From Octopus sinensis (lineage: Eukaryota): a DNA stretch of 64,000 bases. The notes beneath the pieces are model-generated. The model was not told where the DNA came from and did not search any database. It worked only from the letters and a program-made list of their open reading frames with translations. Positions within the stretch are counted from its first letter, which is position 1. Each line of letters begins with the position of its first letter. A program made the translations under genes and the position numbers. The stretch spans positions 198,586,001-198,650,000 of the forward strand of contig NC_042997.1 in assembly GCF_006345805.1 (NCBI RefSeq), in the 5' to 3' direction. Positions 1,650 through 60,976 of the stretch are shown one piece after another.

Positions 1650-2341
1650 CAGTGGTTCTCAATGGGGATCCATATCAAATTTTCGGGGATTCACGTAACA
1701 AAGTACTAAATTGGGGATCCACGATAGTTTTTTTAAGGGCCCCTGAAAGAATTCTGCTTTAGGTGTATATGTTGATATGTATTGGTATGTATTGCAAGAG
1801 ACAGCTAAGTTTCTTTCTGTAACGTTTTACATAATTCAACCTACACAAATTAATGTACGAGAAACAAAATAGGAATTCCGAAGGAGTTTCTATAACACTA
1901 GTTTTTAAACATCGAATGGCTCGTGGGGTCCAGCAAAATGGAACAGTAATCAAAAGGCGAAATAATGAATAGCGACAGTGTAGTTTCAAATGCCTCCAAT
2001 GACCCATTATCGTGTGCAAAACAATAATAGGGGAAATGCTCATTAAAATCTACGAATTAACATTTTCAATTTTATTAAATTTAATCTCTAACAAGAGCAC
2101 TCAGAGAGCACAAACCTCCGCCATGGCAACACCAACGTACTCTCAACGATTAGCCAGGGATGATTTTTAAAATGAGAATATCTGAAATAAACTCGATTGC
2201 TCTCACAAACGAGAATACTAAAAATGAACAGGAAGAATATGAAAATATGAATGTTTTAGAGTAAAATACGCAAGAGTATTCAATTGATAAACCTAGTTTT
2301 CATCCAGCCACTGTAAATACATAAATGGTAGAGAACCCCAT
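1650..2341. mobile_element. Old hAT-like MITE carrying a templated insertion
   Basis: Left end cagtggttctcaa is a typical hAT TIR. The degenerate right end is tagagaaccccat. Flanks ccccagaa / ctttagaa are only a partial 8-bp TSD. Confidence 0.4.
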
Positions 2342-2377: not shown

Positions 2378-2447
2378 GACGCTGTGGAGCAACGGTAGCG
2401 TCTGACTCCAGATCAGAAGGCCGCGTGTTCGAATCACGTCGGGGTCA
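2378..2447 (+). tRNA. tRNA-Trp(CCA)-like copy, probably a pseudogene or SINE head
   Basis: Anticodon arm tctga-ctccaga-tcaga (CCA at 2408-2410), T arm gcgtg-ttcgaat-cacgt, 3' cggggtca. About 2 nt are missing in the D arm and the acceptor stem has one mismatch. Confidence 0.85.
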
Positions 2448-2457
2448 AATTTTCTTG

Positions 2458-2575
2458 GTTTACGGCCATATCACTTTGAAAACACCAGTTCTCGTCCGAT
2501 CATCGAAGTTAAGCAAAGTCGAGCCTAGTTAGTACTTAGATGGTTGACCACTTGGGAAACCTAGGTGCTGTAAAT
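2458..2575 (+). rRNA. 5S rRNA-like full-length copy (diverged)
   Basis: gtttacggccatatcac..gttctcgtccgatc..gaagttaagc..gttagtactt.gatgg.tgacc..tgggaa..ggtgctgtaaa matches metazoan 5S. Terminal helix gtttacggc/gctgtaaat pairs. Several changes are CpG-type transitions. Confidence 0.9.
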
Positions 2576-2581
2576 GTCTTT

Positions 2582-2642
2582 CAATGGCGGTGCCCCAGCA
2601 TGGCCACAGCTCGTGAGCTGAAACTAGATGAAATGAAATGAA
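2582..2642 (+). mobile_element. CR1-type LINE 3' tail appended to the 5S copy
   Basis: ggcggtgccccagcatggccacagc..gctgaaac followed by (gaaat)n. Same motif as the tail of the CR1 remnant at about 26477-26545 and of family A SINEs. Confidence 0.7.
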
Positions 2643-3294
2643 GAACTTCCAAGGACTGGAGGATTGAGACCAGTGATTAGTAGAGAGCTGCAGGGCGTAA
2701 TGATAATACGGGTGGCGAGAAGAAAGGCAAATGAGTCAGGTTCGCCTGGTTTAGAGTTGGCCCCAGCCATCTCAACAGAAGCGGCAACTGTAATAACAGC
2801 AAAAAAAGCAGCGTGAGGGTATTTTAAATCTGTGTTGCAGCGACTGGCGGGTGTTGGTGAATTCGCCCATTCCAGTAAGTCGCGTAGTAGTTTTAAATGT
2901 GGGCTGGATCTCCGTATAATGTAGAGTAGAACTGTTGGAAGCTGACATATCCTCTGCCAGTTTCTGTTATGTAATGGATGTGAAATCGTAAAGAAAGATT
3001 ATCAGTGAAATTGATGCATATCATTTGGAGAGAGACTTTGAATGTCTTAGAGTAAAATGCGCAAGAGTATTCAATTGATAAACCCAGTTTTCATGCAGCC
3101 ACTGCTGTAAATACATAATTAATACTGCCTTTATTTCAAAACAAATAGTAATATCTTCATTATTCAAGGACATAATGCATTACAGATGAATATCTATTCC
3201 CATTTCTCTTTTACATGTAATCAATTACGCCTTTGTAGCTGTGTCTCTTCTCCATCTCTCTCCTATCTCTATCCTTCTCTCCTTTCCTCCACAG

Positions 3295-3415: not shown

Positions 3416-3857
3416 CTGTTGAGATGTATGAAAGTCTTGATGTTATACGCGTACGCATGTAATATAAATACTAGCAGGATCATTAGGAATTGGCGCTTAT
3501 AGATGAGACCAATGGTCATAAAAAGTGAAAGATATTAACAGAGAATACCTTAAGAACATTTCTTTGATTTATAAGAGCTGGTATTATGAAACGGAAATTA
3601 GACATCTACGGTAAACACGGAAAGAAGAATTATTCTTAGATACTGATAATTATTCGCTCTGAAACGCTACGCACTGTTCTGTTATGTAAGAGCCCAAGAA
3701 ATAGACATAAGGAAAATATAAATGGTGTAATAATGAATAGCGACAGTGCAGTTTCAAATGCCTCCAATGACCCATCATCGCGTGCAAAACAATAATAGGG
3801 GAAATGCTCATCAAAATCTACGAATTAACATTTTCAATTTTATTAAATTTAATCTCT

Positions 3858-4195
3858 AACGAGAGCACTTAGAGAGCGCAAACCTCCGCCAAGGCAACAC
3901 CAACGTCCTCTTAACGATTAGCCAGAGGTGATTTTTAAAATGAGAATATCTGAAATAAACTCGACTGCTCTCACAAACGAGAATATTGAAAATGAACAGG
4001 AAACAATAATCCGAAATACTTGTCCGATACCGGATCGATCCCCAAATCTAATCAGTTCGTGCCAGTCATGAGGTCAAGCATCTGTAAACGTTTCATCCGA
4101 ATCCATCCAGCGGTTCTTGAGATATCTTGTCCACGGACAAACAAACAAACACAACTGAAAACAATACCTCTGCCTTCGCTAAGGCAGAGGTAATA
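3858..4195 (+). mobile_element. Helentron/HINE-like non-autonomous element
   Basis: Subterminal acctccgccaaggc, internal (caaa)n, and 3' hairpin tacctctgcctt-cgct-aaggcagaggta (4165-4192). Related copies lie at about 25495-25820 and partially at about 2086-2234. Confidence 0.6.
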
Positions 4196-5239
4196 AGCTG
4201 TATTACCTTGTATAAGCTTGTAAAGAAAATCGAAGTAAGTTTATGCGAAAGCAAGGAAAGACACCTTAAGCAGTGCAGAAGCTGATATACAAAAAGACTG
4301 AATGGAAATGAATGAAATACTTTGACCTTAGTTTGGCTCCATCTGGTATAAAATGGAGTAAAACGATAATAACTGCTGCAAAGAATTATTCAGGGTATCC
4401 TACAATTTTTCAGATTATAGCCTAATATTTCAGAGTAGGTTGGCTTCTATTTCTAGAAAATTAGTGAAGTGTGCAGATGCTTCTAGTGTACAACTACCCC
4501 ATACTAAAACACAGCAAAACCTCTGAGTGTCAGAATTTGCAATCGGATGCTATTTCCTGTGCTATAGTTCCGGAGATCCTACCAAGTCATTCGGCCGTCT
4601 GACAACGTAACATTTTTCTGATCAGTGAGAGATTATCTAAAGTAACGAAACAACAACGACAACAACAACAAGAGACTTGCTGACTGAACAAAAAGTAAAA
4701 TCAATAATTTTTAGTTATAAATAAAACATGATAAACAATCCAAATGAAAGCCATATTCATCGACATATTAGATACAAAATGCATACTTAGAAGTTAATAC
4801 TTAAAATATATTAAAACATTAAGCAAATAAGAAAAAAAATAATCACAATATAAATACAGGTCCATCCATCGATGCTTAAATTCTTCTAATAAAACCGTAA
4901 ATCATAAATTGACACGAAAGGGAAATGTTTTCTGCGCTTTATGAATATTTTACAGCCAGTCGTACTGCAACCAAAGCATGATACACATAATCATTGGAGA
5001 ATAAGTTATCCACATCTGAATAAAATTTAGATAGAGACATACAGTCTAACGTAAGCAAATAAATAGGGAGATCGAAACAAATAACACAGACAGTGAAAAA
5101 TGTATCAATACAGAATGAAATTGCAAATAAAAATTAAACAACGGTTTTACTAAATACGAAAACCCACCAATAGATATGACTATTAAAGTACATATATCAT
5201 GTGGTAAAGAAAGACTGAAATCAAATAAATTTTTTTTTT

Positions 5240-10280: not shown

Positions 10281-10364
<84 letters not shown>

Positions 10365-10915: not shown

Positions 10916-12780
10916 TTTACTTCTCTTATATCATTGATTTCTTCTTTCTCTTTTTGTCTTTCTATCCACACGCGTCCACTTTCACAGGTCTAAGTACAAA
11001 GTGAAGTACTACATATATTCACTCTCACGTACTCTTTATACACGCACGCACATACACACACACATACATCCATCTATACACACGTATATGATAAGTCAAA
11101 ATAGTTACAGGAACCGCCCATAACCCCAACTCCCATATCTTTCTGATTGGGGTAAATTGGTAAATATCCCTGAGCTACGCATTCGATACCGACAGAACAC
11201 TAATGCAATTTTTACCTGAAGAAAAAATAAGTCCCAGTTGAGCAGTGGTAAGTGTAACCAACTTACCCATCCTCTGAAGCTGCTGGCCTTGTGCCAGAAT
11301 TTGAAACCAGTATTATATTTAGATTATAGCTCTGATTTTATTCATCTAATTACTGGAATGAAGTGAAGAATAATATCTAACAACACTCACGAGAGGATAT
11401 GTGACAAATGTACAACAAAATACAGTTTTCAAAGAGGCTGTGTCCGAAGACTTGACTTCTAATGGACTTAAAACTATCTTTATTATTAATTTCATCAGAA
11501 AAATGTACAATTTCTATAGAGATTATGTATCTTATATTTCTCTATAAACATTCAACAATCCCGCAGTATCAAATACAGTCCTGGAATTTCCATGGGCTCC
11601 ACCAGCGATACGTTAATTCTAAGTAAAATTCATAGGTATTAAAGTGCATTATTGTAAATGAAATTGTGAACAATTATATTATAATGGATATTCATGCAAC
11701 ACGGTCCTGAACAATTCCAAAATAGGAGAGAAATACAAATGTTTATCAGGTGTTAAAATGCAATTTGAAGAAATATGTTTACAAATTATGAACAGAATTT
11801 ATTTCCCAGTAAAGACAAAAGAATCCAATTCGTTTGCTTTAAGTACCAGAATGAAACTAATTCAGTGATACATTGAATTACAATTGCTGACAATGTATAA
11901 CTGGGTGTTTTTTTATTGATAGGAAAGATTAAATGATTTTAGTAAAGCTATTCATGATTGCAAAGTGGCAAAGAACTTGATGATAGGCTCTACAGAAGAA
12001 CCGGTTAATGCCAAATGATAAACTGATATAATAATGTTTCTAAGAATATAAGTAGCGCCGTCAGTCAATAATTGCTTATTAATATTATATTGAAGGATTG
12101 TCTTTCTTTAATGAGGGTCTATGAAACGTTTTGTATAATTATGTTATTAGTGGAAACATCTACAGATGTTTTTCTATTGTGTTACGGGAGATATAGGAAA
12201 GAGAAGACAGAACGATAAAGAGTTCATGACTCGGCAATTCATTTTACAATTCATTTCTTCAGCAAATGATATTAATATATAAAAGACTAGATTACTAATC
12301 AAGAGTTTTGTTCGTTCTCCCTCCGCATAGCCACAGTGGGATATAAAAAGAAGATGAAAGAGACAGCAATTGTTATATAGAGAATTATGTGAGATATATA
12401 AACAGCTAAGTAGAGAATTGATATATTGGAATGACGAGGAGACAAAGAAAGCGAGAGAGGAGAGAGAATTTCAGTAGTCACGCAACGGTCAGATGAGCAG
12501 ACAGTGTAAATAGGGATGTATTGTGGGAAAATAACAGAAATATAGCACATGAGGGGATGATAGGGAAAATAATACAGATAGGAAGGGAGTTATACACACA
12601 CATACGCACGCACCTGTGTGTGTATGTATATAGAAGAGCGTAGGTTCGAAACGTTAAAGGATTTTTTTCAATTCCTGAGCGTTATACTAATACATCTGTT
12701 TGTTTTCTACGCCACCTGTCTTCGTCTTTCATTTTTTTCGTGAACTCTCCCCCCTATATATATATATATATATATATATA

Positions 12781-13235
12781 GGCGCATGAGTGGCTGTGTA
12801 GTAAGAAGCTTGCTTACCAACCGCATGGTTCCGGATTCAATCCCACTGCGTGGCACCTGGCACCTTGCGCAAGTGTCTTCTACGATAGCCTCGGGCCGAC
12901 CAAAGCCTTGTGACTGGATTTGGTAGAGGGAAACTGAGAGAAACCCGTCGTATATATATATATATATACATATATTTATATATATATGTGTGTGCGTGTG
13001 TGTGTGTGCGTGTGTGTGTGTTTATATGTCTGTGTGTCTCTGTCCCCCCAACATCGTTTGACAACTGATGCTGGTGTGTTTACGTCCCCGTCACTTGCGG
13101 TTTCGGCAAAAGAGACCAATAGAATAAGTACTAGGCTTACAAAGAATAAGTCCTGGGGTCGATTTGCTTGACTAAATGCGGTGCTCCAGCATGGCCGCAG
13201 TCAAATGACTGAAGCAAATAGAAGAATAAAAGAAT
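12781..13235 (+). mobile_element. Family A SINE
   Basis: Full-length match with internal (TA)n(TG)n. Confidence 0.9.
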
Positions 13236-13666: not shown

Positions 13667-14295
13667 CTCCATGCATAGAGAGTGTGAATGAGAGAGAGAG
13701 TGATATAGAGGGGGAACGATGAAAAGAAGATACAATGTTTGTGAGGAGTTAATGATTATAATGAGGGTGTAAATGGAGGGAAGATAAGACTTACTGAAAG
13801 AAGGCAGAAAGAAACTGCATTGTTTTGTTGTTAGTATTATGCTAGCTGTTAACAATAAACATATAGAAACTGTAGACAGAACTTCTTGCCGTGAAAAGTC
13901 TATTTAGAAACATAATTCTGATATGTGTGTTTTACTTCTTGGAGTTTCAATCATTCTCATTTTCCACGTTTCTAATTAGCAATATTTATACACATTTTAT
14001 TATAGCGTGTTAAATAGCAACATCTTAAATTTAATTTAAGCATGCAATCAACTTACAGCTAAATTGTTTTAAAATATCTTGCATCAATTGCCATAATTTC
14101 AGAAGTTTTCAGGATAAATAACTTGCCATATAAAAAATACGCTGTGCATGAATAACACTTATGTATTTCACCACAAACTAAAGATACTTAAGACCATTGC
14201 GCTGATTCTGTCCTAGAAATCTGATAACACTTGGTACTGTGATATAACATAAAACACAGTAGTGATATACATACATATTTATTATAGAAGGGACA

Positions 14296-14472
14296 GGCGT
14301 AGGAGTGGCGGTATGGTAAGTAGCTTGCTTACCAACCACATTGTTCCGTGTTCAGTCCCACTGCGTGGCACCTTGGGCAAGTGACTTCTACTATAGCCTC
14401 GGGCCGACCAAAGCCTTGTGAGTGGATTTGGTAGTTAGAAACTGAAAGAGTCCCGTCGTGTATGTATATGTG

Positions 14473-14510
<38 letters not shown>

Positions 14511-14735
14511 TGTGTGTGTGTTTGTATATGTTTGTGTGTCTGTTTTTCCCCCCAACATCGCTTGACAACCGATGCTGGTGTGTTTACGTCCCCGTCACTT
14601 AGCGGTTCGGCAAGAGAGACTGATAGTATAAGTACTAGGCTTACAAAGAATAAGTCCTCTGGTCGATTTGCTCGACTAAAGGCGGTGCTCCAGCATGGCC
14701 GCAGTCAAATGACTGAAACAAATAGAATAAAAGAA
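14296..14735 (+). mobile_element. Family A SINE (apparent recombinant)
   Basis: 5' flank like the 15365 copy, 3' tail like the 12781 copy. Confidence 0.9.
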
Positions 14736-15364
14736 TATATATATATCCATGCATAGAGAGTGTGAATGAGAGAGAGTGATATAGAGGGGGAACGATGAAA
14801 AGAAGATACAATGTTTGTGAGGAGTTAATGATTATAATGAGGGTGTAAATGGAGGGAAGATAAGACTTACTGAAAGAAGGCAGAAAGAAACTGCATTGTT
14901 TTGTTATTAGTATTATGCTAGCTGTTAACAATAAACATATATAAGCTGTAGACAGAACTTCTTGCCGTGAAAAGTCTATTTAGAAACATAATTCTGATAT
15001 GTGTTTTACTTCTTGGAGTTTCAATCATTCTCATTTTCCACGTTTCTAATTAGCAATATTTATACACATTTTATTATAGCGTGTTAAGTAGTAACATCTT
15101 AAATTTAATTTAAGCATGCAATCAACTTACAGCTAAATTGTTTTAAAATATCTTGCATCAATTGCCATAATTTCAGAAGTTTTCAGGATAAATAACTTGC
15201 CATATAAAAAATACGCCGTGCATGAATAACACTTATGTATTTCACCACAAACTAAAGATACTTAGACCATTGCGCTGATTCTGTCTTAGAAATCTGATAA
15301 CACTTGGTACTGTGATATAACAAAAAACACAGTAGTGATATACATACATATTTATTATAGAAGT

Positions 15365-16335: not shown

Positions 16336-17440
16336 GAAATATATATATATCTATTCAATATTTAGTTTGATAAAGTATTTCATCTATTTGAGAATCATCA
16401 CTGCCGTTTCTGCACATTCTGAGAGCATAATAAATGTAAATGAATCGAAATGCTTCATCCAGAAATTGAAATCATATTTGATCTGGGGTTGTATGAAAAA
16501 AATCCCTTTTGTGCTCTAGCAAGCGTTTTACTTTTATAATGATGTTATTGTTGCTGCTGTTTTGATCTTTAGATATTCTTAGATGACTTTTGACTTCAAA
16601 GTATTTTACAACCTATAATTGACTGACTTATGCAGCAATGAACTGTCGATAAAATGCAGTTAGGGAATGCATACAATACTAAAAACATACTTATTATCCG
16701 AAATTTCACCTTAGTTTGTGATAAATAACTTTACTGGTATATTAATGCTGTATCTGTGTGCTATAGCACAACATAAAGTAATATTGTGTTTCCTAAGCTG
16801 GAGTCTCTGGCAACACAGCATCAAATTGAATGCTGTCGCGATCGTTAGCTTCATGTGCACATTTTATACGACATATTTTATACGACATAGTATTTTTCTG
16901 CATTCATATGAAACTACTTGGATTTTGAACAACATATTTTGAACTAATTTAAATGTTATTGACTTCGTGTTTACATTTAAATTTAATATCTTATAATAAG
17001 ACACGCTATAATAAAACGTGTACAATATTGCTAATTAGAAATTGAAAAAATAAATAAGTAAATTAATGAAAGTAATTGAAGTAATATGCGCATTTCGGTA
17101 TATAGTTTCTAAAGAAGTGACTTCTTTTAACATGGAATCATTGCCTGATATTCTATTTCTTGCAGGAAAACCAGAGGGGTACCAGTCGAAAATGGTGGGT
17201 TTTATTTCTGCTACCTATCACGGATTTTTAATGCTTAAACACAAGCATACACACACAGTCACACACACAAACTTTTATAAAGAAGACGGAAAACATACAG
17301 GCTACATATGTGTGTATATGTATGTACGTATGTCATTATTCAGTTTATTTCAAGATTTCTTGCCAATAGATAAAGAACCGGTTTCTAACCTAGATGCAAG
17401 GTTCTTTCATTGGAATTTTAACATCAACAGAGTATTTTTT

Positions 17441-17585
17441 GTATGTATGTATGCATGCATGTATGTATGTATGTATGCATGCATGTATGTATGTATGCAT
17501 GTATGTATGCATGCATGCATGTATGCATGCATGTATGCATGCATGCATGTATGTATGCATGTATGTATGTATGCATGCATGCATA
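17441..17585. repeat. Mixed (ATGT/ATGC)n tetranucleotide repeat
   Basis: Direct reading of the sequence. Confidence 0.95.
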
Positions 17586-17651
17586 GATTTGTATGTTTTA
17601 TGTATGTATTCTCACACACAGAGTTGCATATCTAGACATACTCATATATAT

Positions 17652-19519: not shown

Positions 19520-20215
19520 ATGTACCTTACATGCCTTCAGTCGGATCTGTTTGCTGTTGGCTGGAAAAGAATAATATACTTCTAAATGAAGATAAGTTTA
19601 ATTTGATCCTCTTTGGAAAAGAGAACAATCTGAACTACCATAGACGACCCCCTAATGTCATCCAACATCACCAGAGACCTTGAAGATAATTTAAGCTGAA
19701 GTTCCTACATAAACAGCAAGGTTGACTTGGTTCGCAAGATGAGCTCCTGGATTCTGAGAACTTCCTAGTCTAGAGATGCTCATACCATCATCCTTCTCTT
19801 CTCTACTTTTGCCCGGTTGCCGACTGTAGTCGTCCCACACGAAGCAAAGCATTATGAAAGTAGAAGCACTACAGAGATAGACAGAAAGATAGACAGCATG
19901 ACAGGCATTGGCTATTGGGGCGCGACTGAAAAAAAACTCAATCTCTACTTTCTCCTACGCCACCGGAAGCGCGACATTATTTATGTAATGTGGAAAACAT
20001 TCCTTTAATATTGCACAAATAATGTTAGCATTACGACACAACTACTTTACATCAACTGGTTCAGCTCTCTTTAATATTATACCAAAATACATCAAAAGGG
20101 AAACAGATCCCATTAAATTTAAAAGTTCTCTGGACAAATTTCTTAAAAAAATCTCGGACCAACCTCCTACACCCGGATACAATAACTTTTTGCTAGAGTG
20201 GGCCATTGTATCCCA
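19520..20215 (+). mobile_element. CR1/Jockey-group LINE RT 3' remnant
   Basis: WLEKNNILLNEDKFNLILFGK, YW..LKKLNLY and ALFNIIPKYIKRETDPIKFKSSLDKFLKKISDQPPTPGY. Confidence 0.75.
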
Positions 20216-20822
20216 TATATAACTTCGGTCTGAATCACGATCTAAAATGACTTCACACTGTGGTGCTATTAAGATAGACATAGTCTGGGCCTATACTGGC
20301 CGAAACCTATCTAGGTTATCTAAGTTTTGTATTACATCATTGGTCTTCCTTTCCCTGTCTGCCTCTCTCTCTCCCTTCCCTTATCTCGCTATTGAATTCA
20401 TCTGTGCGGGTGTATTTGTGTGTATGCGTATGTAAGGTACCTATGTATAAAAGAGAACGCATGTTTCTTTCATAGATCTCCCGGTTTTACTTCGTAAAAT
20501 AAGAGAAGCGAAATATCAGTGGAAGACACTGCTTTTTTTATGTAGACAAAACTTTAAAACTGCTTTCAGCGACGTTTCAGATTTCTTTCTGTTTATACCG
20601 AAATTATTGACAGATGAAAAAGCCTATATAAATAGGAACCTATAATTCTACTTCTCATCAGTATTATTACTATTATTCATTGTCTTCGTCGTCGTCGTTG
20701 TTATTATTTTTGTTGTTGCCATGATAACAATCATAATCATTCTAAATTTATCTTAAACTTCTTGCTTATTTTTCTATTATATACGCAATTAACTATTAAA
20801 TGTTTTGATTTTGCTTTCGCAG

Positions 20823-22189: not shown

Positions 22190-22240
<51 letters not shown>

Positions 22241-22352
22241 TATAGATACATACACGTAAATATATATATATATACATATATATATATACACATATATATA
22301 GATACATACACGTAAATATATATATATACACATATATATAGATACATACACG

Positions 22353-22394
<42 letters not shown>

Positions 22395-22981
22395 TACATA
22401 CACATAAATATATATATATATATACATATATATACAGATACATACACATAAATATATATATATATACATATATATACAGATACATACACGTAAATATATA
22501 TATATTTATACATATACAGATACATACACGTAAATATATATATATTTATACATATATATACAGATACATACACGTAAATATATATATATTTATACATATA
22601 TATACATATACATACACGTAAATATAAATATATATATATATATACGTACATACATACGTATATACATACATATACGTATATATGCATATATATAAATACA
22701 TACACACGCATATATGTATATATATATATATATAAATACATACACACGTATATATATATATATATATATATAAATACATACACACGCATATATATATATA
22801 TATATAAATACATACACACGCATATATACATATATACATATATATATATATAAATACATACACACGCATATATATATATAATATATATATATATAAATAC
22901 ATACACACGCATATATATATATATATACATATATATAAATACATACACAACGCATATATATATATTATATATATATATATA
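22177..22981. repeat. Compound TA-derived minisatellite with two unit types
   Basis: Units (ta)n..cagatacatacacgtaaa up to about 22625, then (ta)n aaatacatacacacgca. Confidence 0.95.
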
Positions 22982-23078
22982 TCAGAAATATTTTCTTAGC
23001 TGTGAGGCCATGTGGGGTCTACATCTAGCACATTGGATGTCCACTTAGTGGTCATACCTCATATATATGTGTATATAT

Positions 23079-25494: not shown

Positions 25495-25820
25495 AAGCCT
25501 CCGCCACGATTAGCCAGAGGTGGCTTTTAAGGTGAGAATATCTGAGATAAACTCGACTGCTCTCACAAACGAGAATATTAAAAACGAACCCAACTGGTCT
25601 CAAAAGTAAAAAAAAACCACAGAAAAACGGAAAAATAATTCAGAAACCTTGTCTGGTATCGGATCGACCCCAAAATCTAATCAGTTCTTGTCAGTTACGA
25701 GGCCAAACATCCCTGAACGTTTCATCCGAATCTACCCAGCGGTTCTTGAGATATCTTGTCCACGGACAAACAAACAAACAACTGAAAAACAATACCTCCG
25801 CCTTAGCTAAGGCGGTGGTA
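25495..25820 (+). mobile_element. Helentron/HINE-like element, second copy
   Basis: Homologous to 3858-4195, with 3' hairpin tacctccgccttagctaaggcggtggta. Confidence 0.6.
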
Positions 25821-26224
25821 ATGAATATCTTGTGAAGCTTAAACTTTAAATTGCTAATTTGTTAGTCGAACATAAACGTTTCGAAATCCAGCCGTTGATA
25901 TGGACGATTATATGAGAAAACTTATAAGTAAGATTTAGGTTATATGGAAAATATTTACTAAATCGTCCGTTACATTGACAAATGTTACTGCGTAAAGAAT
26001 AATTCCTAAACCAAGATACGCCTGGTTAAAGAATCATTTTCCAAATCCTGATTCCTTGAAAATAAGCGAACAGGCGCTGAGGTTTGTTTTTAATCCAGCA
26101 AACACAAAGTCATGACTCCAATCAAAGGATCGGACTGTTACATCCATTTCCAGTGGTGGCCACTATTAGCTTCCAACTATACCATCTTCGAATTCACGAG
26201 CATAGATATCCTCTCGCCCCTCGC

Positions 26225-26545
26225 CCCAGCACTCTGTTGTAACAGTCTGACATTTAGAGGTCCTCAACTGTTAAACTCTCTACCTAAAGAAGTCAGAAAT
26301 ATAAAAGGAACTTCTACTGTAACATTAAAAAAAAAATCATTGGATAGATTCCTAACGACGATACAAGACCAGCCAACCATTTAAGGATACACAAACTGGA
26401 AAAATCAGCTGCCACAAACTCAATCATAGACCAACCTCCAGCCATAAAACGAAAACAAAACCAATAGAAAGCAAATTAAGGCGGTGCTCTAGCATGGATG
26501 CAGTCCTACAGCTGAAACCGTAAAAAAGAATAAAAGAAAAAGAAC
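26225..26545 (+). mobile_element. CR1-type LINE 3' end with intact tail
   Basis: CNSLTFRGPQLLNSLPKEVRNIKGTSTVTLKKK/LDRFLTTIQDQPTI, then aaggcggtgctctagcatgg..gctgaaacc(gtaaaaagaataaaag). Confidence 0.8.
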
Positions 26546-27485
26546 AAAAGTCAGTTAGTTATTGCGGTTTTTCGGAAGAGTTCTGATAATAAAAACCAAA
26601 ACGTTATGCAGCCAATGAAAAGGATTAAATATGCCTGGAAAGTTGAATGAACGTGTAATTAGCTTCAGTTGAAAAGTTGATTCAAATATGAAAAGGTGAT
26701 ATTCAGGACTTATTGTATGCTCTTAATGAAACCCTTAATTATGAAAATGCCTAAGGAGTACACAGAACAACAAGTGTCTACTTCAGCGTAGAAAAGACAC
26801 CTCCGCAACAGAGATCTCTTCTAAAAGCATATGCAGAATTATCTTGTGCTCTAGAATGACCTACAGAAAATTATCCAAATGTTGAACGAAGAATGACAGT
26901 TTTAAAAATATCTGTAATGATAGCACAGGACTGCTCTAGGGAATAATTAGAGATTCGTTAGAGGGTATTGTAATCAATCATTAATGTTTTCTTATAAAAA
27001 TAACAGAACCAGATGTTCTGAATTTACTTTTTACTCGTTGCTTATGCGAAAAAAGAAGCGTGTTAAATTTATTTGGATTGAATTACATATAATTCTGTTC
27101 AAAGGATTTCTTCGGTATAAGAAGTATATGTATTTATTCGACTGATTAGATGTAGATGCTTTTTCTGTGTATGCAAGAGGCATTATATGCCTAGAGTATA
27201 TTTAATGCGTGTACATGTTTTCCAGTATTGAATGATATATACGCTTATAAAGACTGTTTTAACTTCCTATAACATCGAAAATGCTGATGGCGAAATAGGA
27301 AAAAATAAAAAGGTGAAATGCGTTAATTTCGTTGATCGAGGTATGGGAGTATTATATTGTTTAACCGCCAATCGCAAGTGATTGTGGCCTGATGCCTGGT
27401 GGCTTTAACCACGCTTTTGCTAGTTGTTTTAGAAGCCTGTGTAGGCACGAGAACACAGGCATTCTCTTATCCCTCGTCCCAGGAG

Positions 27486-28357
27486 AATATCCTTTTCTAC
27501 TCTAGGCACAAGGCCCGAAATTTCTGGGGATGGGGGCCAGTCAATTAGATCGTCCCAGTACGCAACTGGTACTTAATTTATCGACCCCGAAAGGATGAAA
27601 GGCATAGTCGACCTCGGCGAATTTGAACTCAGAGCGTAACGGCAGACGAAATACCTATTTCTTTATTACCCACAAGGGGCTACACACAGAGGGGACAAAC
27701 GAGGACAGACAAACAGATTTAGTCGATTACATCGACTCCAGTGCGTAATTGGTACTTAATTTATCGACCCCGAAAGGATGAAAGGCAAAGTCGACCTCGG
27801 CGGAATTTGAACTAAGAACGTAACGGCAGACGAAATACCTATTTCTTTATTACCCACAAGGGGCTAAACATAGAGGGGACAAACAAGGACAGACAAAGGG
27901 ATTAAATCGATTATATCGACCTCTGTGAGTAACTTATTTATTTAATCGACCCCGAAAGGATGAAAGGGAAAGTCGACCTCGGTGGAATTTGAACTCATAA
28001 CGTAACGACAGACGAAATACCGCTAAGTATTTCGCCCGACGTGCTAACGTTTCTTATTTCTTTATTGCCCACAAGGGGCTAAACATAGAGGGAACAAACA
28101 AGGACAGACAAAGGGATTAAATCGATTATATCGACCTCTGTGAGTAACTTATTTATTTAATCGACCCCGAAAGGATGAAAGGGAAAGTCGACCTCGGTGG
28201 AATTTGAACTCATAACGTAACGACAGACGAAATACCGCTAAGTATTTCGCCCGACGTGCTAACGTTTCTTATTTCTTTATTGCCCACAAGGGGCTAAACA
28301 TAGAGGGAACAAACAAGGACAGAGACAAAGGAATTAAATCCATTACATCGACCCCAG
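27486..28357 (-). mobile_element. Family C SINE concatemer (4-5 units)
   Basis: Head-to-tail repeats. One block repeats with a period of about 215 bp (28021 and 28236). Confidence 0.9.
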
Positions 28358-32965: not shown

Positions 32966-34163
32966 AATAGATTTATATTGCATGCACAGAATCATGCACT
33001 CGAATATATGCATGATAAACTTTATAATAATTAAAAAATAGAAGAGATATACAAATGAAAATACCCTGTTGCTGATGTTGAAATTCATATGAAGGAGTCT
33101 TGGATCTTGGTTATAAACTTACCCTTTCTCTATTAGCAAGAAATTTTGGAATAAAATTGAACAATGGCATACATACATACATACATATAGAGAAAGAGAT
33201 AGAGAAAGAAAGAGAGTATTGAAGACAACAGAACACTGTTACCATAAATATATTTAAAAGTAGACGACAAAAATAATAAATCAGAAGATACGGGTGCCAG
33301 CCTCATATACGGAAAGCTAAATCCGAAATTTCTTTAGCTTTAGAAGAAAATGAAAATCCGCATTTGTAATTGCATTTTGTAAGAGCAGAAGAGATAAGTT
33401 TGAAAAGTCGTAACTTAAGTTTTCAGGCTTTGAAAGAATTATCTCCTGAAAGATCGTTTTACAGTTAATGTGTACAATGACTGCACTTGTACACTATACT
33501 GTCTGCTTTATAATTCTCATTCACCACTTTGCAAGCAGTCGCGATCATCTACACAGTGAGTATAATAGTACAGAATAGAATATTTGATAGCTTCCTTTAT
33601 TATCAGCTGAATTTAGAAAATGAAACAAGGATATTAAATTGGGATACCCAAAGTAGAATTTATTGGAGACTAGAATAATAGATTATCTGATAAGTAAATC
33701 TCCTTTTTATTTCTATTATTACTTACAGAGTAATGCATGTTCAGATTCTACACACCAAAATATAACACAAAATTTTACTAAGGAAATTCAATTACAATGA
33801 TACATTACAAATTTTTGTGAACAATCTTGTTTTTGCTTACGCTAATATCCTTCTGTCAAATATTCGTTTCTATGATTCAACGACTAATGCCAAGTGAAGA
33901 TTTAATTATTCTGCAACTGCTTAAAGTAGAATCTTTCTTACAATAAACTAACACATCAAATAATTCTAAGTTCATTAAATGAACTTTAATTATTTCATCG
34001 TTATACAGTATGCTTGTATTGATTTCTTACACAGACAAAAGGTCTGATATTTCGGAAAACAGAATAGTCGATTATAACCCAACAAGTGCTTGACTATTAT
34101 TTATTAAACCAATCTCGAGAGAATGAAAATTTAAAGTGATTTCCAACGTGACTTGAACACATA

Positions 34164-34326
34164 GGCGCAGGGGGTGGCTGTGTGGTAAGTAGCTTGCTTA
34201 CCAACCACATGGTTCCAGGTTCAGTCCCACTGCGTAGCACCTTGGGCAAGTGTCTTCTTCTATAGCCTCGGGCCGACCAAAGCCTTGTGAGTGGATTTGG
34301 TAGACGGAAACTGAAAGAAGCCCGTC

Positions 34327-34366
<40 letters not shown>

Positions 34367-34570
34367 GTGTGTATGTTTGTGTGTGTCCCCAACTTCGCTT
34401 GACAACCGATGCTGGTGTGTTTATGTCATCGTAACTTAGCGGTTCGGCAAAAGAGACCGATAGAATAAGTACTAGGCTTAAAAAGAATAAGTCCTGGGGT
34501 CGATTTGGTCGACTAAAGACGGTGTTCTAGCATGGCCGCAGTAAAAATGACTAAAACAAGTAAACAGAAT
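34164..34570 (+). mobile_element. Family A SINE
   Basis: Full-length match. Confidence 0.9.
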
Positions 34571-34704
34571 ATAGATGTACGCTACTAAATACACAGGGAT
34601 ATTCTGTCTACCACTACGACCATTCTGCGAGTTCGCTGTTCTGTATATTGGGTCCAAATTTTAGCGCAGAGCGAACTATTTCGGTGTAGAGGGGTGGAGT
34701 AAAT

Positions 34705-35064: not shown

Positions 35065-35440
35065 GGAGGCGCAATGGCCAGTGGTTAGGGCAGCGGACTC
35101 GCGGTCTTAGGATCGCGGTTTCGATTCCCAGACCGGGCGTTGTGAGTGTTTATTGAACGAAAACACCTAAAACTCCACAAGGCTCCGGCAGGAGGTGGTG
35201 GTGAACCCTGCTCTACTCTTTCACCACAACTTTCTCTCACTCTTTCTCGCTGTTTCTCTTGTACCTGTATTTCAAAGGGCCGGCCTTGTCACACTGTGTC
35301 ACGCTGAATCTCCACGAGAACTACGTTAAGGGTAGATGTGTCTGTGGAGTGCTCAGCCATTCGCACGTTAATTTCACGAGCAGGCTGTTCCGTTGATCGG
35401 ATCAACTGGAACACGCGTCGTCATAGCCGACGGGGTGTCA
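35065..35440 (+). mobile_element. Family B SINE
   Basis: tRNA-like head. TSD tgagagacga. Confidence 0.9.
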
Positions 35441-36009
35441 GTCGTGCCTGAGAGACGAATACAGACGGCGTGAAAATAATATAACTAAAACTTACAATAA
35501 AACTAAGATAGATTCTAAACATCTCTTCAACATTTGCTGCACGACGTTAGGATTGCCCTTGTGTTCTTTTCAATTATACACAAGTTCAAACCATCGCTTC
35601 ACATGTTCTTAATGTCAGGAAAAATTTTAAATAGAAATTATGACTCGTTTTGTTAAACAGATATAATGAAATACTTGTATTGTTCTAACTATTTTATGGT
35701 TATTGTGAAATTTACCATTATAGCAGTAGAGTCGTTGACTATTTTATTGTGTTTCTCGAAAGGTGGGTCACGATCCATTTATGATATTAAATTGTCAATG
35801 TAGTGAGTTAAATAGAATTTAGCTTCTACCGCTAGACGAATGTCAGGTACATTTCAGACGAAAATATTAATAGCAGACGCTGTTTGATTTCTGACTTCAA
35901 TTTCCCAGTCTTCTAGCTTCAATTTTCCAAGATTCCGTTCTAAAAGATACTGAGGCTCTTCAACACATACGTTTTTTCCAATGTGTTGATAATCTTGATA
36001 CAAATATGG

Positions 36010-36036
36010 GGGGGACACACAAACATACACACACAG

Positions 36037-36067
<31 letters not shown>

Positions 36068-36244
36068 ACACACACACATGATGGGCTTCTTTCAGTTTCC
36101 GTCTACCAAATCCACTCATAAGGCTTTGGTCGGCCCGAGGCTATACATGAAGACACTTGCCCAAGGTGCTACGCAGTGGGACTGAACCTGGAACCATGTG
36201 GTTGGTAAGCAAGCTACTTACCACACAGCCACTCCCTGCGCCTA
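36010..36244 (-). mobile_element. Family A SINE 5' half (duplicate at about 37860-38094)
   Basis: Head, central module and microsatellite. Confidence 0.85.
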
Positions 36245-36398
36245 TTCTCCTATTCTCAATCGTCCCTGTCTTGGGAGCATAAAATTCTAAGTTAGTGCAT
36301 CAGTCGAAGATGTCGAACTAGACTCAAACGAGTTTGAAGAAAACAAGATATTAGAAACAATATCTGGGCTTTATGTTATTCCATGAAATCCCCATTCA

Positions 36399-36796
36399 TC
36401 TTTATATATAAAAGTAAGGTTGTGTGTCTGTCTCCTACGATTTAGATTCCTAACTACTCCCACATTTTGCGGTGCAGTTTAATCAAAACCGGGTATCTTA
36501 TAGTCGTTATTCATATCGAGCCCTTCTGGTTATTAGCGCGCGTCTACGATGAATCTACGATTAAAAAAAAAAAATTACCATCATTTTTTTTCCATTTTAA
36601 TGCATTTTTCGCTATTAAATAAGGGAAGTAACTCTCTAAAAATGTCTACGATGAGTCAACGATTTTAAACAAAATTTACCATAATTGTTTTCCATTTTTA
36701 ATGCATTTTTTTGCTATATTTTGGCTATAACTCTCTAAAAATGCTTATATAGTTATTTCCCTTACAAACCCGAGCAACGCTGGGCGATACTGCTAG
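36399..36796 (+). mobile_element. Non-autonomous Helitron
   Basis: TC...CTAG termini at an AT site. Confidence 0.9.
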
Positions 36797-36914
36797 TTTC
36801 AACTAAAACCAAAATGAAAATCTCCGTTGATGGAGAGAATCAAATTGTGGAGTAAGTTATCATTGTACATCAAAGACCACACTCTTGACATGACTACAGC
36901 TATGTAAACGATTC

Positions 36915-37290
36915 GGAGGCGCAATGGCCAGTGGTTAGGGCAGCGAACTCGCGGTCGTAGGATCGCGGTTTCGATTCCCAGACCGGGCGTTGTGAGTGTT
37001 TATTGAACGAAAACACCTAAAACTCCACAAGGCTCCGGCAGGAGGTGGTGGTGAACCCTGCTCTACTCTTTCACCACAACTTTCTCTCACTCTTTCTCGC
37101 TGTTTCTCTTGTACCTGTATTTCAAAGGGCCGGCCTTGTCACACTGTGTCACGCTGAATCTCCACGAGAACTACGTTAAGGGTAGATGTGTCTGTGGAGT
37201 GCTCAGCCATTCGCACGTTAATTTCACGAGCAGGCTGTTCCGTTGATCGGATCAACTGGAACACGCGTCGTCATAGCCGACGGGGTGTCA
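36915..37290 (+). mobile_element. Family B SINE (recombinant)
   Basis: 5' flank and head variants from the 38765 copy, body from the 35065 copy. Confidence 0.9.
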
Positions 37291-37884
37291 GTCGTGCCTG
37301 AGAGACGAATACAGACGGCGTGAAAATAATATAACTAAAACTTACAATAAAACTAAGATAGATTCTAAACATCTCTTCAACATTTGCTGCACGACGTTAG
37401 GATTGCCCTTGTGTTCTTTTCAATTATACACAAGTTCAAACCATCGCTTCACATGTTCTTAATGTCAGGAAAAATTTTAAATAGAAATTATGACTCGTTT
37501 TGTTAAACAGATATAATGAAATACTTGTATTGTTCTAACTATTTTATGGTTATTGTGAAATTTACCATTATAGCAGTAGAGTCGTTGACTATTTTATTGT
37601 GTTTCTCGAAAGGTGGGTCACGATCCATTTATGATATTAAATTGTCAATGTAGTGAGTTAAATAGAATTTAGCTTCTACCGCTAGACGAATGTCAGGTAC
37701 ATTTCAGACGAAAATATTAATTGCAGACGCTGTTTGATTTCTGACTTCAATTTCCCAGTTTTCTAGCTTCAATTTTCCAAGATTCCGTTCTAAAAGATAC
37801 TGAGGCTCTTCAACACATACGTTTTTTCCAATGTGTTGATAATCTTGATACAAATATGGGGGGGACACACAAACATACACACAC

Positions 37885-37929
<45 letters not shown>

Positions 37930-38249
37930 TGATGGGCTTCTTTCAGTTTCCGTCTACCAAATCCACTCATAAGGCTTTGGTCGGCCCGAGGCTATACATG
38001 AAGACACTTGCCCAAGGTGCTACGCAGTGGGACTGAACCTGGAACCATGTGGTTGGTAAGCAAGCTACTTACCACACAGCCACTCCCTGCGCCTATTCTC
38101 CTATTCTCAATCGTCCCTGTCTTGGGAGCATAAAATTCTAAGTTAGTGCATCAGTCGAAGATGTCGAACTAGACTCAAACGAGTTTGAAGAAAACAAGAT
38201 ATTAGAAACAATATCTGGGCTTTATGTTATTCCATGAAATCCCCATTCA

Positions 38250-38646
38250 TCTTATATATAAAAGTAAGGTTGTGTGTCTGTCTCCTACGATTTAGATTCC
38301 TAACTACTCCCACATTTTGCGGTGCAGTTTAATCAAAACCGGGTATCTTATAGTCGTTATTCATATCGAGCCCTTCTGGTTATTAGCGCGCGTCTACGAT
38401 GAATCTACGATTAAAAAAAAAAAATTACCATCATTTTTTTTCCATTTTAATGCATTTTTCGCTATTAAATAAGGGAAGTAACTCTCTAAAAATGTCTACG
38501 ATGAGTCAACGATTTTAAACAAAATTTACCATAATTGTTTTCCATTTTTAATGCATTTTTTTGCTATATTTTGGCTATAACTCTCTAAAAATGCTTATAT
38601 AGTTATTTCCCTTACAAACCCGAGCAACGCTGGGCGATACTGCTAG
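38250..38646 (+). mobile_element. Non-autonomous Helitron (duplicated copy)
   Basis: Copy of 36399-36796. Confidence 0.9.
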
Positions 38647-38764
38647 TTTCAACTAAAACCAAAATGAAAATCTCCGTTGATGGAGAGAATCAAATTGTGG
38701 AGTAAGTTATCATTGTACATCAAAGACCACACTCTTGACATGACTACAGCTATGTAAACGATTC

Positions 38765-39510: not shown

Positions 39511-39562
<52 letters not shown>

Positions 39563-39618
39563 GCGTGTGTGTGTGTATGTATTGTATATGTATGTATCCA
39601 AAAACGAAATATGTATGT

Positions 39619-39654
<36 letters not shown>

Positions 39655-46930: not shown

Positions 46931-46950
46931 TATATATATATATATCTTTT

Positions 46951-60495: not shown

Positions 60496-60562
60496 GATAA
60501 ATGATGGTAAAATATTAAGAAGAATGGTTACAGTGGCAGAGAACAATATGAGGAATATATGA

Positions 60563-60744
60563 GTCGCAGGAGTGGCTGTGTGGTAAGTTGCTTGCTAACC
60601 AACCACATGGTTCCGGGTTCAGTCCCACTGCGTGGCATCTTGGGCAAGTGTCTTCTGCTATAGCCCCGGGCCGACCAATGCCTTGTGAGTGGATTTGGTA
60701 GACGGAAACTGAAAGAAGCCTGCCGTATATATGTATATATATAT

Positions 60745-60783
<39 letters not shown>

Positions 60784-60976
60784 TCCCCCTAGCATTGCTT
60801 GTCAACCGATGCTGGTGTGTTTACGTCCCCGTCACTTAGCGGTTCGGCAAAAGAGACCGATAGAATAAGTACTGGGCTTACAAAGAATAAGTGCTGGGGT
60901 CGATTTGCTCGACTAAAGGCGGTGCTCCAGCATGGCCGCAGTCAAATGACTGAAACAAGTAAAAGAGTAAAAGAGT
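60563..60976 (+). mobile_element. Family A SINE
   Basis: Full-length match with (tg)n. Confidence 0.9.

What the first reader, a model, noticed from the sequence alone, without database searches (positions are those of the whole stretch)
2378..2642. Chimeric tRNA-Trp + 5S rRNA + CR1 tail: candidate composite Pol III retroposon
Seen: a near-complete tRNA-Trp(CCA), a 10-nt T-rich spacer (aattttcttg), a full-length 5S rRNA copy, then a LINE-type 3' recognition tail ending in (gaaat)n. The same tail sits on the CR1 remnant at about 26477 and on family A SINEs. Established: SINE2 use tRNA promoters, SINE3 use 5S promoters, and both borrow LINE tails for mobilisation. Inference: this unit has two internal Pol III promoters in tandem plus a CR1 tail. 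It may be a tRNA-5S dimeric SINE, a 5S-SINE inserted behind a tRNA copy, or a retrocopy of a linked tRNA-5S rDNA transcript. In two places CCGG has become CTAG and helix pairing is retained; double CpG decay would also explain this.
Basis: partly seen in the sequence, partly recalled or inferred. Interest (0 to 1): 0.85.

Follow-up and report, generated by a model that had tools for sequence, protein, structure and literature searches.

The report
tRNA-Trp + 5S + LINE-tail composite retroposon
A 265-base unit joins a slightly damaged tRNA-Trp copy, a complete and well-folded 5S rRNA copy and the 3' end of a LINE, so it is most likely a LINE-mobilised composite SINE of a known general kind, but I could not test whether the tRNA-5S junction recurs in the genome.

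Summary
Rfam finds a tRNA with anticodon CCA at 2378-2447 (44.7 bits) and a full-length 5S rRNA at 2458-2576 (104.3 bits). A 10-nt spacer, AATTTTCTTG, separates them. From 2585 there is a two-hairpin tail ending in (ATGAA)3 at 2642.

The tail core recurs 11 times in the window (0.07 expected). The other copies are on about 11 tRNA-derived family-A SINEs. A more diverged copy lies 96 nt after the stop of a LINE ORF2 C-terminal remnant, so the tail is LINE-derived.

The 5S part keeps 33 of 34 model pairs despite 20 differences from a native-like 5S (31 of 100,000 random placements do as well). Window CpG o/e is 0.95, so decay does not explain the CTAG sites.

Both junctions look like ends of primary Pol III transcripts: no CCA plus an AAUUUU trailer, and UCUUU. 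This points to RT template jumps.

The decisive test could not be run. No cephalopod DNA was reachable, the window has one 5S and one tRNA-Trp, and there is no significant TSD.

- Family-level composite SINE: about 0.5.
- One-off chimera: about 0.2.
- Two-step adjacency: about 0.12.

The closest precedent is the tRNA/5S hybrid MEG-TR. An Octopus vulgaris annotation already lists a 5S SINE class. Interest is moderate.

The parts
2378..2447 (+). tRNA-Trp(CCA)-derived module. The A-box region is TGGAGCAACGG and the B-box region is GTGTTCGAATCAC. There is no CCA end. The D stem lacks 2 nt and the acceptor stem has one mismatch.
   Evidence: Rfam RF00005, 44.7 bits, model 1-71. ARAGORN finds none. 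65 of 73 columns identical to canonical tRNA-Trp.
2448..2457 (+). Spacer AATTTTCTTG. AA+TTTT looks like a pre-tRNA 3' trailer with a Pol III terminator, followed by CTTG in front of 5S position 1.
   Evidence: Sequence. It holds the only T run of 4 or more in 2378-2821.
2458..2576 (+). Full-length 5S rRNA-derived module with the internal control region (box A, IE, box C) and the 5S fold preserved.
   Evidence: Rfam RF00001, 104.3 bits, model 1-120. 33 of 34 model pairs are canonical. 99 of 119 positions match native-like 5S L001. Structure retention: 31 of 100,000 random placements do as well. Box A has 1 change, IE 2 and box C 4.
2577..2584 (+). Linker TCTTTCAA. TCTTT is a likely remnant of the 5S 3' U-run, too short to terminate. 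CAA(T) is where similarity to other tails begins.
   Evidence: Sequence. Tail alignment: copy 32913 has CCAATGCAGTGC.
2585..2606 (+). Tail hairpin 1 (UGGC.GGUGC-CCCA-GCAU.GGCCA), shared with family-A SINEs and the LINE remnant.
   Evidence: RNA fold. The motif occurs 11 times against 0.07 expected. Alignment A3 and pair counts.
2607..2620 (+). Tail hairpin 2 (CAGCU-CGUG-AGCUG). It has the same shape as family-A CAGUC-AAAU-GACUG, with two compensated pairs.
   Evidence: RNA fold. Pairs 29/37 and 31/36 are changed on both sides in the unit only.
2621..2642 (+). AAACTAG followed by the terminal short tandem repeat (ATGAA)3, equivalent to (GAAAT)n.
   Evidence: TRF 2628-2642, period 5, 3 copies. 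Family A ends in (AAGAGTAA)n-like repeats instead.
26112..26384 (+). Comparator: C-terminal remnant of a LINE ORF2 (...FRGPQLLNSLPKEVRNI...LDRFLTTIQDQPTI*).
   Evidence: ORF. It matches residues ~900-970 of ~1000-aa proteins P0005 and P0010, which carry Exo_endo_phos + RVT_1. Alignment A4.
26480..26550 (+). Comparator: LINE 3' end carrying the same tail core (GGCGGTGCTCTAGCATGG...CAGCTGAAAC) followed by A-rich repeats, 96 nt after the ORF2 stop.
   Evidence: Sequence. nhmmer 26476-26524, E=1e-12.
60562..60963 (+). Comparator: a full-length family-A tRNA-derived SINE with the shared tail. It is one of at least 12 copies in the window and has TSD TATATG.
   Evidence: blastn, flanks, tail fold.

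Best explanation
The 265-bp unit is one LINE-dependent composite retroposon, a complex SINE.

Its core is a SINE3-type element. A complete 5S rRNA-derived head is fused to the roughly 60-nt 3' recognition module of an APE-type LINE. That module consists of two hairpins, AAAC and a short tandem repeat. The same module mobilises the abundant tRNA-derived family-A SINEs of this genome. A tRNA-Trp-derived module sits in front of the 5S head.

Inferred origin: a LINE reverse transcriptase primed on a tail-bearing RNA, then jumped to the 3' end of a complete 5S primary transcript. At the 5S 5' end, in the same or a later event, it jumped to the 3' end of an unprocessed pre-tRNA-Trp. This would leave the two U-run junctions that are seen.

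Inferred function: Pol III transcribes the unit in one of two ways. It can start at the tRNA type-2 promoter and read through the T4 at 2450-2453. Or it can start at the 5S type-1 promoter, which gives a 5S+tail RNA with no internal terminator. The LINE RT recognises the two-hairpin tail and its repeats and copies the RNA into new TA/AT-rich sites.

What is shown: the three modules, their order and integrity, the LINE origin and fold of the tail, and the position of the terminator.

What is inferred: the template jumps, transcription, mobilisation, and that the composite is a repeated family rather than a private copy. I put the family-level reading at about 0.5.
For: - Modules and order.
- Tail shared with 11 SINE copies and with a LINE 3' end lying behind an APE+RT ORF2 C-terminus.
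- The tail folds into the same two hairpins as the family-A tail. Hairpin 2 differs by two compensated pairs.
- Both junctions carry what a primary Pol III transcript would carry. The tRNA has no CCA and has the trailer AA-UUUU. The 5S is followed by UCUUU, then the tail homology begins.
- The literature proposes RT template switching onto small RNAs as the way hybrid heads form (PMC4824008; PMC4758252).
- The 5S module is not a decayed pseudogene. It keeps 33 of 34 pairs despite 20 differences from a native-like 5S, and only 31 of 100,000 random placements do as well. It scores like native genes. There is no CpG depletion in the window.
- It is not a native 5S gene. There is one copy in 64 kb and no terminator after it.
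- Base-rate argument (inference). If the window is an ordinary sample of the genome, a configuration seen in the only 5S copy of the window is unlikely to be a one-in-thousands accident.
- An Octopus vulgaris repeat annotation lists 4 '5S' SINE consensus families covering 9.83 Mb, about 0.35% of the genome. That is about one 265-bp copy per 64 kb, which is what is seen here (PMC13282606). This applies only if the window is from an octopod, which I could not verify.
Against: - No second copy of the tRNA/5S or the 5S/tail junction could be found. The window has none and no collection on hand holds cephalopod DNA.
- No significant target-site duplication flanks 2378-2642. The best shared k-mers are 5-7 nt, which is the chance level. 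So it is not shown that the tRNA was inserted together with the 5S and tail.
- The TTTT at the junction would stop a good part of the transcripts that start at the tRNA promoter. This would work against inheritance of the tRNA module.
- Box C of the 5S promoter carries 4 changes, so activity of the type-1 promoter is uncertain.
- Covariation support for the tail hairpins rests on one sequence and is not significant in the shuffle control (87 of 500).
Confidence: 0.5

Rival explanations
1. One-off chimeric retro-pseudogene. During a single LINE-mediated reverse transcription, the RT jumped from a tail-bearing LINE or SINE RNA to 5S rRNA (or copied a 5S-SINE RNA) and then to a pre-tRNA-Trp. The product was inserted once and never amplified. 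The tRNA/5S junction is private to this locus.
For: - The junctions end in U-runs, as expected if the RT lands on the 3' ends of nascent Pol III transcripts.
- Chimeric retrogenes with small-RNA 5' parts are documented for LINE RTs (Buzdin et al. 2003, as cited in PMC4758252, and PMC4824008).
- Only one copy is present in the window.
- The T4 would hinder propagation of the tRNA part.
Against: - Such chimeras are rare per retroposition event, so meeting one in the only 5S copy of an arbitrary 64-kb window is improbable. This is inference and depends on how the window was chosen.
- The tRNA module is structurally damaged (D-arm deletion). A fresh copy of a functional pre-tRNA should be intact unless it decayed in place, yet the neighbouring 5S shows almost no structural damage.
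Confidence: 0.2
2. Two independent events. A 5S+LINE-tail SINE landed about 10 bp behind a resident tRNA-Trp gene or pseudogene, just after its terminator, by chance or because the LINE endonuclease likes the T-rich trailer. The tRNA is not part of any mobile unit.
For: - tRNA plus AA plus TTTT is exactly the layout of a resident tRNA gene with its terminator.
- 5S+tail alone is a complete, terminator-free Pol III unit.
- No TSD encloses the whole unit.
Against: - No TSD encloses 2458-2642 either. The sequence before 2458 and the sequence after 2642 share nothing beyond 3-4 nt.
- Landing within 10 bp of one of the rare tRNA loci is very unlikely by chance (inference).
- The family-A copies mobilised through the same tail type insert in TA-rich sites, not T-runs.
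- The tRNA is itself degenerate.
Confidence: 0.12
3. Native linked Pol III genes. This would be an orphon of a tRNA-Trp/5S rDNA unit, with a 5'-truncated LINE or SINE tail that happened to insert right after the 5S gene. The 5S would be a functional or recently functional variant gene.
For: - The 5S scores like native genes and keeps its fold.
- 5S rDNA linked to tRNA genes is reported in some animals (e.g. PMC3464664, listed; I did not read it in detail).
Against: - There is a single 5S in 64 kb and no array.
- There is no T run of 4 or more after the 5S.
- Only 10 bp of upstream sequence lies before the tRNA body, leaving no room for the usual 5S upstream elements.
- The tRNA is not intact.
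- The tail begins 8-9 nt after the 5S end. That is the layout of a head-tail SINE, not of a random nearby insertion.
- Two native 5S loci fetched from environmental contigs have no tRNA in front and no such tail.
Confidence: 0.05

Closest known systems
MEG-TR, the hybrid tRNA/5S rRNA SINE of fruit bats (Gogolevsky, Vassetzky and Kramerov 2009). It is listed among 5S-derived SINEs in PMC10946416 Table 2. Its module order is recalled from memory of the abstract and was not read here.
   Same: A complex SINE that combines a tRNA-derived and a 5S rRNA-derived module in one LINE-mobilised unit.
   Different: MEG-TR is mammalian and L1-dependent with an A-rich tail. It was formed from two pre-existing SINE families. 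The unit here has a near full-length tRNA-Trp with its trailer and terminator, a structurally intact 5S, and a stringent-type two-hairpin LINE tail. Multi-copy status is unproven here.
SINE3 (zebrafish; Kapitonov and Jurka 2003) and other 5S-derived SINEs: HaSE3, PxSE4/5, MEG-RS/RL, Ped-1, 5S-Sauria.
   Same: A 5S-derived head carrying box A/IE/C, plus a 3' end shared with a partner LINE and with a co-resident tRNA-derived SINE. HaSE3 and HaSE1 share a tail in the same way.
   Different: Those families have a body between head and tail, and 5S heads of about 63-75% identity whose fold is often lost. Here the 5S is complete, 83% identical to a native-like 5S, with 33 of 34 pairs kept, and it joins the tail after 8 nt. 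A tRNA module precedes it.
AmnSINE1 / Deu-SINE subgroup with a 5S + tRNA composite head (Nishihara et al. 2006, as described in PMC4824008, and PMC4758252).
   Same: A composite head made of 5S and tRNA-derived sequence, explained by RT template switching onto a small RNA.
   Different: The order is reversed: there the 5S is 5' of a partial tRNA-derived region and has taken over promoter function. There is a Deu core and an L2-type tail. Here the tRNA is 5' and both modules are nearly complete.
Twin SINE of Culex pipiens (Feschotte et al. 2001, cited in PMC8010984).
   Same: A dimeric Pol III-derived retroposon proposed to descend from an unprocessed dimeric precursor transcript.
   Different: Both Twin monomers are tRNA-like. 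No 5S is involved.
UnaL2/UnaSINE1 of the eel (Kajikawa and Okada 2002, cited).
   Same: Mechanistic model for the tail. A LINE RT recognises a conserved 3' stem-loop plus terminal short repeats shared by LINE and SINE.
   Different: Shown experimentally in the eel system and only inferred here. The sequences are unrelated.

Membership tests
SINE (SINEBase definition, PMC3531059) | Short (<1 kb), interspersed, non-tandem | tested here: met
   265 bp. Single, non-tandem copy in the window.
SINE (SINEBase definition, PMC3531059) | At least 60% identity to a tRNA, 5S rRNA or 7SL RNA over at least 60 nt | tested here: met
   5S: 99 of 119 identical to native-like 5S L001 and 104.3 bits. tRNA: 65 of 73 identical to canonical tRNA-Trp and 44.7 bits.
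SINE (SINEBase definition, PMC3531059) | [quoted passage not shown] | not testable with these tools
   No cephalopod DNA is in the reachable collections. There is one copy in the window.
SINE (SINEBase definition, PMC3531059) | Distinct from a plain RNA pseudogene (extra modules or diagnostic changes) | tested here: met
   A LINE-derived tail is fused 8 nt after the 5S. There is no A-tail and no CCA.
SINE3 (5S-derived SINE) | 5S-derived head with the type-1 internal promoter (box A, IE, box C) | tested here: inconclusive
   The head is complete. Relative to native-like 5S, box A has 1 change, IE 2 and box C 4. Promoter activity was not tested.
SINE3 (5S-derived SINE) | 3' end shared with a partner LINE | tested here: met
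   The same tail core lies 96 nt after the stop of an APE+RT ORF2 C-terminal remnant.
Hybrid tRNA/5S complex SINE (MEG-TR type) | The tRNA and 5S modules belong to one retroposed unit (common TSD, recurrent junction) | tested here: inconclusive
   There is no significant TSD around 2378-2642 nor around 2458-2642. The attempt to find a paralogous empty site failed. Junction recurrence is not testable.
Functional tRNA-Trp gene | Intact cloverleaf | tested here: not met
   ARAGORN finds no tRNA. There is a 2-nt deletion in the D stem and an acceptor mismatch.
Native 5S rRNA gene | Tandem array and a T-run terminator directly after the gene | tested here: not met
   One 5S in 64 kb. It is followed by TCTTTC, and the next T4 is 246 nt downstream of the 5S end.
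CR1-clade LINE as partner | The ORF2 in front of the tail is an APE+RT LINE protein | tested here: met
   ORF 26112-26384 aligns to residues ~900-970 of P0005 and P0010 (E 7e-6 and 2e-4). These proteins carry Exo_endo_phos + RVT_1.
CR1-clade LINE as partner | Phylogenetic placement of the RT in the CR1 clade | not tested
   No RT domain survives in the window. The homologues are unnamed environmental proteins and a crab protein.

The most novel reading that the evidence does not exclude
The unit represents an abundant cephalopod SINE family with a true tRNA-Trp/5S dimeric head. A position-independent type-2 (tRNA) promoter has been placed in front of a 5S-type SINE, whose own type-1 promoter depends on upstream context. 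The 5S module is kept under selection for the native 5S RNA fold, for example to bind 5S partners and reach the ribosome where the LINE RT is made, as Alu does through SRP9/14. It would be the first tRNA/5S hybrid SINE outside mammals, and the first with both modules nearly full-length and a stringent LINE tail.
Probability: 0.25. Interest if true: 0.6.

Novelty: new member of a known kind. Interest (0 to 1): 0.4.

Why it matters
5S-derived SINEs are rare, and tRNA/5S hybrids rarer still. I found none described in detail for molluscs in the open literature I could search. The one trace is a bare '5S' SINE class in an Octopus vulgaris repeat table.

If the junction is recurrent, this unit gives a clean example of how complex SINE heads are built from whole primary Pol III transcripts. 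It also offers a natural test of two questions: whether a type-2 promoter can rescue a type-1-promoter SINE, and whether the 5S fold itself is selected in such elements.

If the junction is private, the unit is an ordinary chimeric retro-pseudogene. Its use would then be limited to marking template switching by a stringent-type LINE RT.

Tried and rejected
1. Fishing for other copies through spurious ORFs.
   - A 50-aa frame across the tRNA/5S junction found only two native 5S genes in TARA and JGI metagenome contigs. Neither has a tRNA or the tail.
   - A concatenate of eight open frames over both junctions found nothing.

2. DNA pattern scans.
   - Metagenome contigs with the 5S/tail junction pattern, then with the abundant family-A tail pattern: 0 hits each. 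These collections therefore hold no DNA of this organism.
   - Viral contigs: one chance hit in a GC-rich phage.

3. Fetching genomic DNA of the organism through window-encoded proteins.
   - The LINE C-terminus found no word-index hits.
   - Ten window ORFs are not in the collection.

4. TSD search. No repeat above chance was found.

5. Paralogous empty site. The 5' flank contains repeats that recur at 3039-3118 and 3720-4002. Homology stops at 2324, 53 bp before the unit. Alignment of the joined flanks to the paralogue scores below shuffles.

6. Pfam on the LINE remnants themselves gave no hit. Homologues had to be used instead.

7. Literature.
   - No open paper describes a cephalopod 5S or tRNA/5S SINE.
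   - Sequence strings of the window's repeats occur in no held paper.
   - The octopus genome paper is not held.

8. Readings considered and rejected.
   - Decayed 5S pseudogene: the fold is kept and there is no CpG depletion.
   - Native 5S array: single copy and no terminator.
   - Functional tRNA gene: broken D arm.

Full report
**Observation**

Rfam's gathering-threshold scan of the whole window returns exactly two matches:
- a tRNA at 2378-2447 (+), 44.7 bits, model 1-71;
- a 5S rRNA at 2458-2576 (+), 104.3 bits, model 1-120, untruncated.

The anticodon loop reads CUCCAGA, so the anticodon is CCA (Trp). ARAGORN does not call the tRNA. The differences include a 2-nt deletion in the D stem and a shifted 5' acceptor strand. 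It is therefore a tRNA-Trp-derived sequence, not an intact gene.

The 5S is as good as native genes by score. Three native 5S genes on two environmental contigs score 101-113 bits.

The remaining parts are:
- the spacer AATTTTCTTG between the modules, 2448-2457;
- TCTTTCAA after the 5S, 2577-2584;
- hairpin 1, 2585-2606;
- hairpin 2, 2607-2620;
- AAACTAG, then (ATGAA)3 to 2642.

**The tail is LINE-derived and shared**

The core GCYCCAGCATGGCC occurs 11 times in the window against 0.07 expected. An HMM of the tails finds 13 sites. Eleven end copies of a roughly 400-bp tRNA-derived SINE ('family A'), which has at least 12 copies and covers about 8% of the window. One site is the unit. One is at 26476-26524.

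That last tail lies 96 nt after the stop codon of ORF 26112-26384. The ORF's product aligns to residues ~900-970 of ~1000-aa proteins (P0005, P0010). Those proteins carry Exo_endo_phos and RVT_1 domains (alignment). So the ORF is the C-terminus of an APE-type LINE ORF2, and the motif is the end of its 3' UTR. Clade assignment to CR1 was not tested. The remnants themselves have no Pfam hit, and the homologues are unnamed.

The tail of the unit and the family-A tail fold into the same two hairpins. Hairpin 2 differs by two compensated pairs: CAGCU/AGCUG against CAGUC/GACUG. This supports a structured RT recognition element and a source LINE subfamily other than that of family A. The terminal repeats differ too: (GAAAT)n against (AAGAGTAA)n.

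The covariation rests on one sequence and is not significant by the shuffle control (87 of 500). The slide control is clear, with 83% of positions paired against at most 42%.

**The 5S module is not a decayed copy**

Compared with a native-like 5S (L001), it has 20 substitutions (99 of 119 identical), ten of them in paired positions. Even so, 33 of 34 Rfam pairs are canonical:
- 3-116 changed from C-G to U-A;
- 18-60 changed from G-C to U-A, by two transversions;
- 70-105 changed from G-C to A-U.

The neighbouring pair at the second CTAG site and the helix IV changes also keep pairing, from my reading of the sequence. Placing the same substitutions at random keeps at least 33 pairs in 31 of 100,000 trials.

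L001 is a proxy, not the ancestor. The test therefore shows only that this copy left a fold-constrained lineage recently. That lineage could be the native 5S or a constrained SINE master.

**Junctions and terminators**

The only run of four or more T in the unit is 2450-2453, exactly between the tRNA and the 5S. The next is at 2822. The tRNA has no CCA and is followed by AA-TTTT, which is the layout of an unprocessed pre-tRNA. The 5S is followed by TCTTT, and tail similarity then starts at CAAT (copy 32913 has CCAATGCAGTGC).

Both junctions thus look like 3' ends of primary Pol III transcripts. This is what RT template jumps onto small RNAs would leave. The literature invokes that mechanism for hybrid SINE heads and chimeric retrogenes (PMC4824008; PMC4758252).

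Functionally, 5S+tail is a terminator-free Pol III unit. Transcription from the tRNA promoter into it needs read-through of a T4.

**What could not be shown**

The window holds only one 5S and one tRNA-Trp. No significant TSD brackets either 2378-2642 or 2458-2642. Family-A copies have only 4-7-bp TA-rich TSDs, so weak TSDs are expected for this LINE type.

The 5' flank contains repeats that recur nearby, but they end 53 bp before the unit and give no empty site.

All attempts to reach other copies failed: pseudo-ORF protein searches, the LINE protein, exact look-ups of window ORFs and DNA scans. The abundant family-A tail is absent from the metagenome collection. This shows that the collections do not contain this organism.

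**Context from the literature**

- SINEBase's definition requires at least 100 copies and separates SINEs from RNA pseudogenes (PMC3531059).
- Known 5S-derived SINEs are SINE3, AmnSINE1, HaSE3, PxSE4/5, MEG-RS/RL/TR, Ped-1 and 5S-Sauria. No mollusc is in that list.
- MEG-TR is a tRNA/5S hybrid. This is my recollection of Gogolevsky et al. 2009; only the family name is confirmed.
- A 2026 repeat annotation of Octopus vulgaris lists a SINE class '5S' with 4 consensus families and 9,831,953 bp, about 0.35% of the genome (PMC13282606). That predicts about one 265-bp copy per 64 kb, as seen here. This holds only if the window is octopod, which I could not verify.
- Kapitonov and Jurka's point that type-1 promoters depend on upstream context (quoted in PMC3272025) gives a rationale for a tRNA module in front of a 5S SINE.

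**Weighing**

Chance adjacency of a 5S SINE and a tRNA locus within 10 bp, or a one-off triple chimera, are both rare events. If the window is an ordinary sample, seeing the configuration in the only 5S copy present favours a family-level composite. This is inference and is sensitive to how windows were chosen.

Against this stand the T4 at the junction, the lack of a TSD and the lack of any second copy.

My weights are:
- family-level composite SINE, 0.5;
- one-off template-switch chimera, 0.2;
- two-step adjacency, 0.12;
- native linked genes plus a tail insertion, 0.05;
- the remainder unassigned.

**Verdict**

The feature is real and correctly described. The mechanism is of a known kind: a LINE-tail-dependent Pol III retroposon with a hybrid head. 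I file it as a new member of a known kind with moderate interest (0.4). A genome-wide junction count, which is cheap to run, would decide its status.

Noticed in passing
window 35065-38851: A tandem duplication of about 1.85 kb: 35065-37000 matches 36915-38851 at 99.6% identity. Each unit holds the 5' half of a family-A SINE on the minus strand. It looks like a very recent segmental duplication, or possibly an assembly artefact.
   Followed up: partly
window 27539-28353, 41251-41616, 55717-56277 and more than 15 dispersed fragments: An abundant repeat of 184-215 bp (TTTATTGCCCACAAGGGGCTAAACATAGAGG...) occurs both in short tandem arrays and as dispersed fragments. Copies are 84-92% identical. 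Its nature (satellite-forming SINE or MITE) was not examined.
   Followed up: partly
window 20022-20222 (+), with degenerate ORF2 pieces from about 19400: A second APE-LINE ORF2 C-terminal remnant (FNIIPKYIK...FKSSLDKFLKKISDQPPTPGY). It is homologous to the one at 26112-26384 but has no GGCGGTGC-type tail behind it, so it is a different LINE subfamily.
   Followed up: partly
window 12778-13228, 14295-14745, 34161-34575, 46530-46933 (-), 58332-58714, 60562-60963 and others: Family-A SINEs of about 400 bp have a tRNA-like head that Rfam does not recognise at E<=1, and an internal (TA)n(TG)n microsatellite. They lie in TA-rich sites with 4-7-bp TSDs such as TATATG. At least 12 copies cover about 8% of the window.
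   Followed up: partly
window 22191-22982; also 10294-10364, 17440-17609, 39487-39730: Long impure (TA)n and (TGTA)n microsatellites. They produce dozens of sub-threshold Rfam 'miRNA' matches (mir-297, mir-466, mir-3149 and others), which are artefacts.
   Followed up: yes
window 1952-2234 ~ 3720-4002; 2248-2324 ~ 3039-3118; 2146-2229 ~ 25506-25589: The 5' flank of the unit is itself made of repeat fragments that recur within 2 kb in a different order (91-94% identity). The element they belong to was not identified.
   Followed up: partly
window 4280-4320: ...GCAGTGCAGAAGCTGATATACAAAAAGACTGAATGGAAATGAATGAAAT ends in GAAAT/GAATG repeats like those of the unit's tail. It may be a degenerate 3' end of the LINE subfamily that supplied the unit's tail.
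   Followed up: no
whole window: GC is 36% and CpG observed/expected is 0.95, so there is no CpG depletion in this repeat-rich region. No credible protein-coding ORF of 110 aa or more is present.
   Followed up: partly
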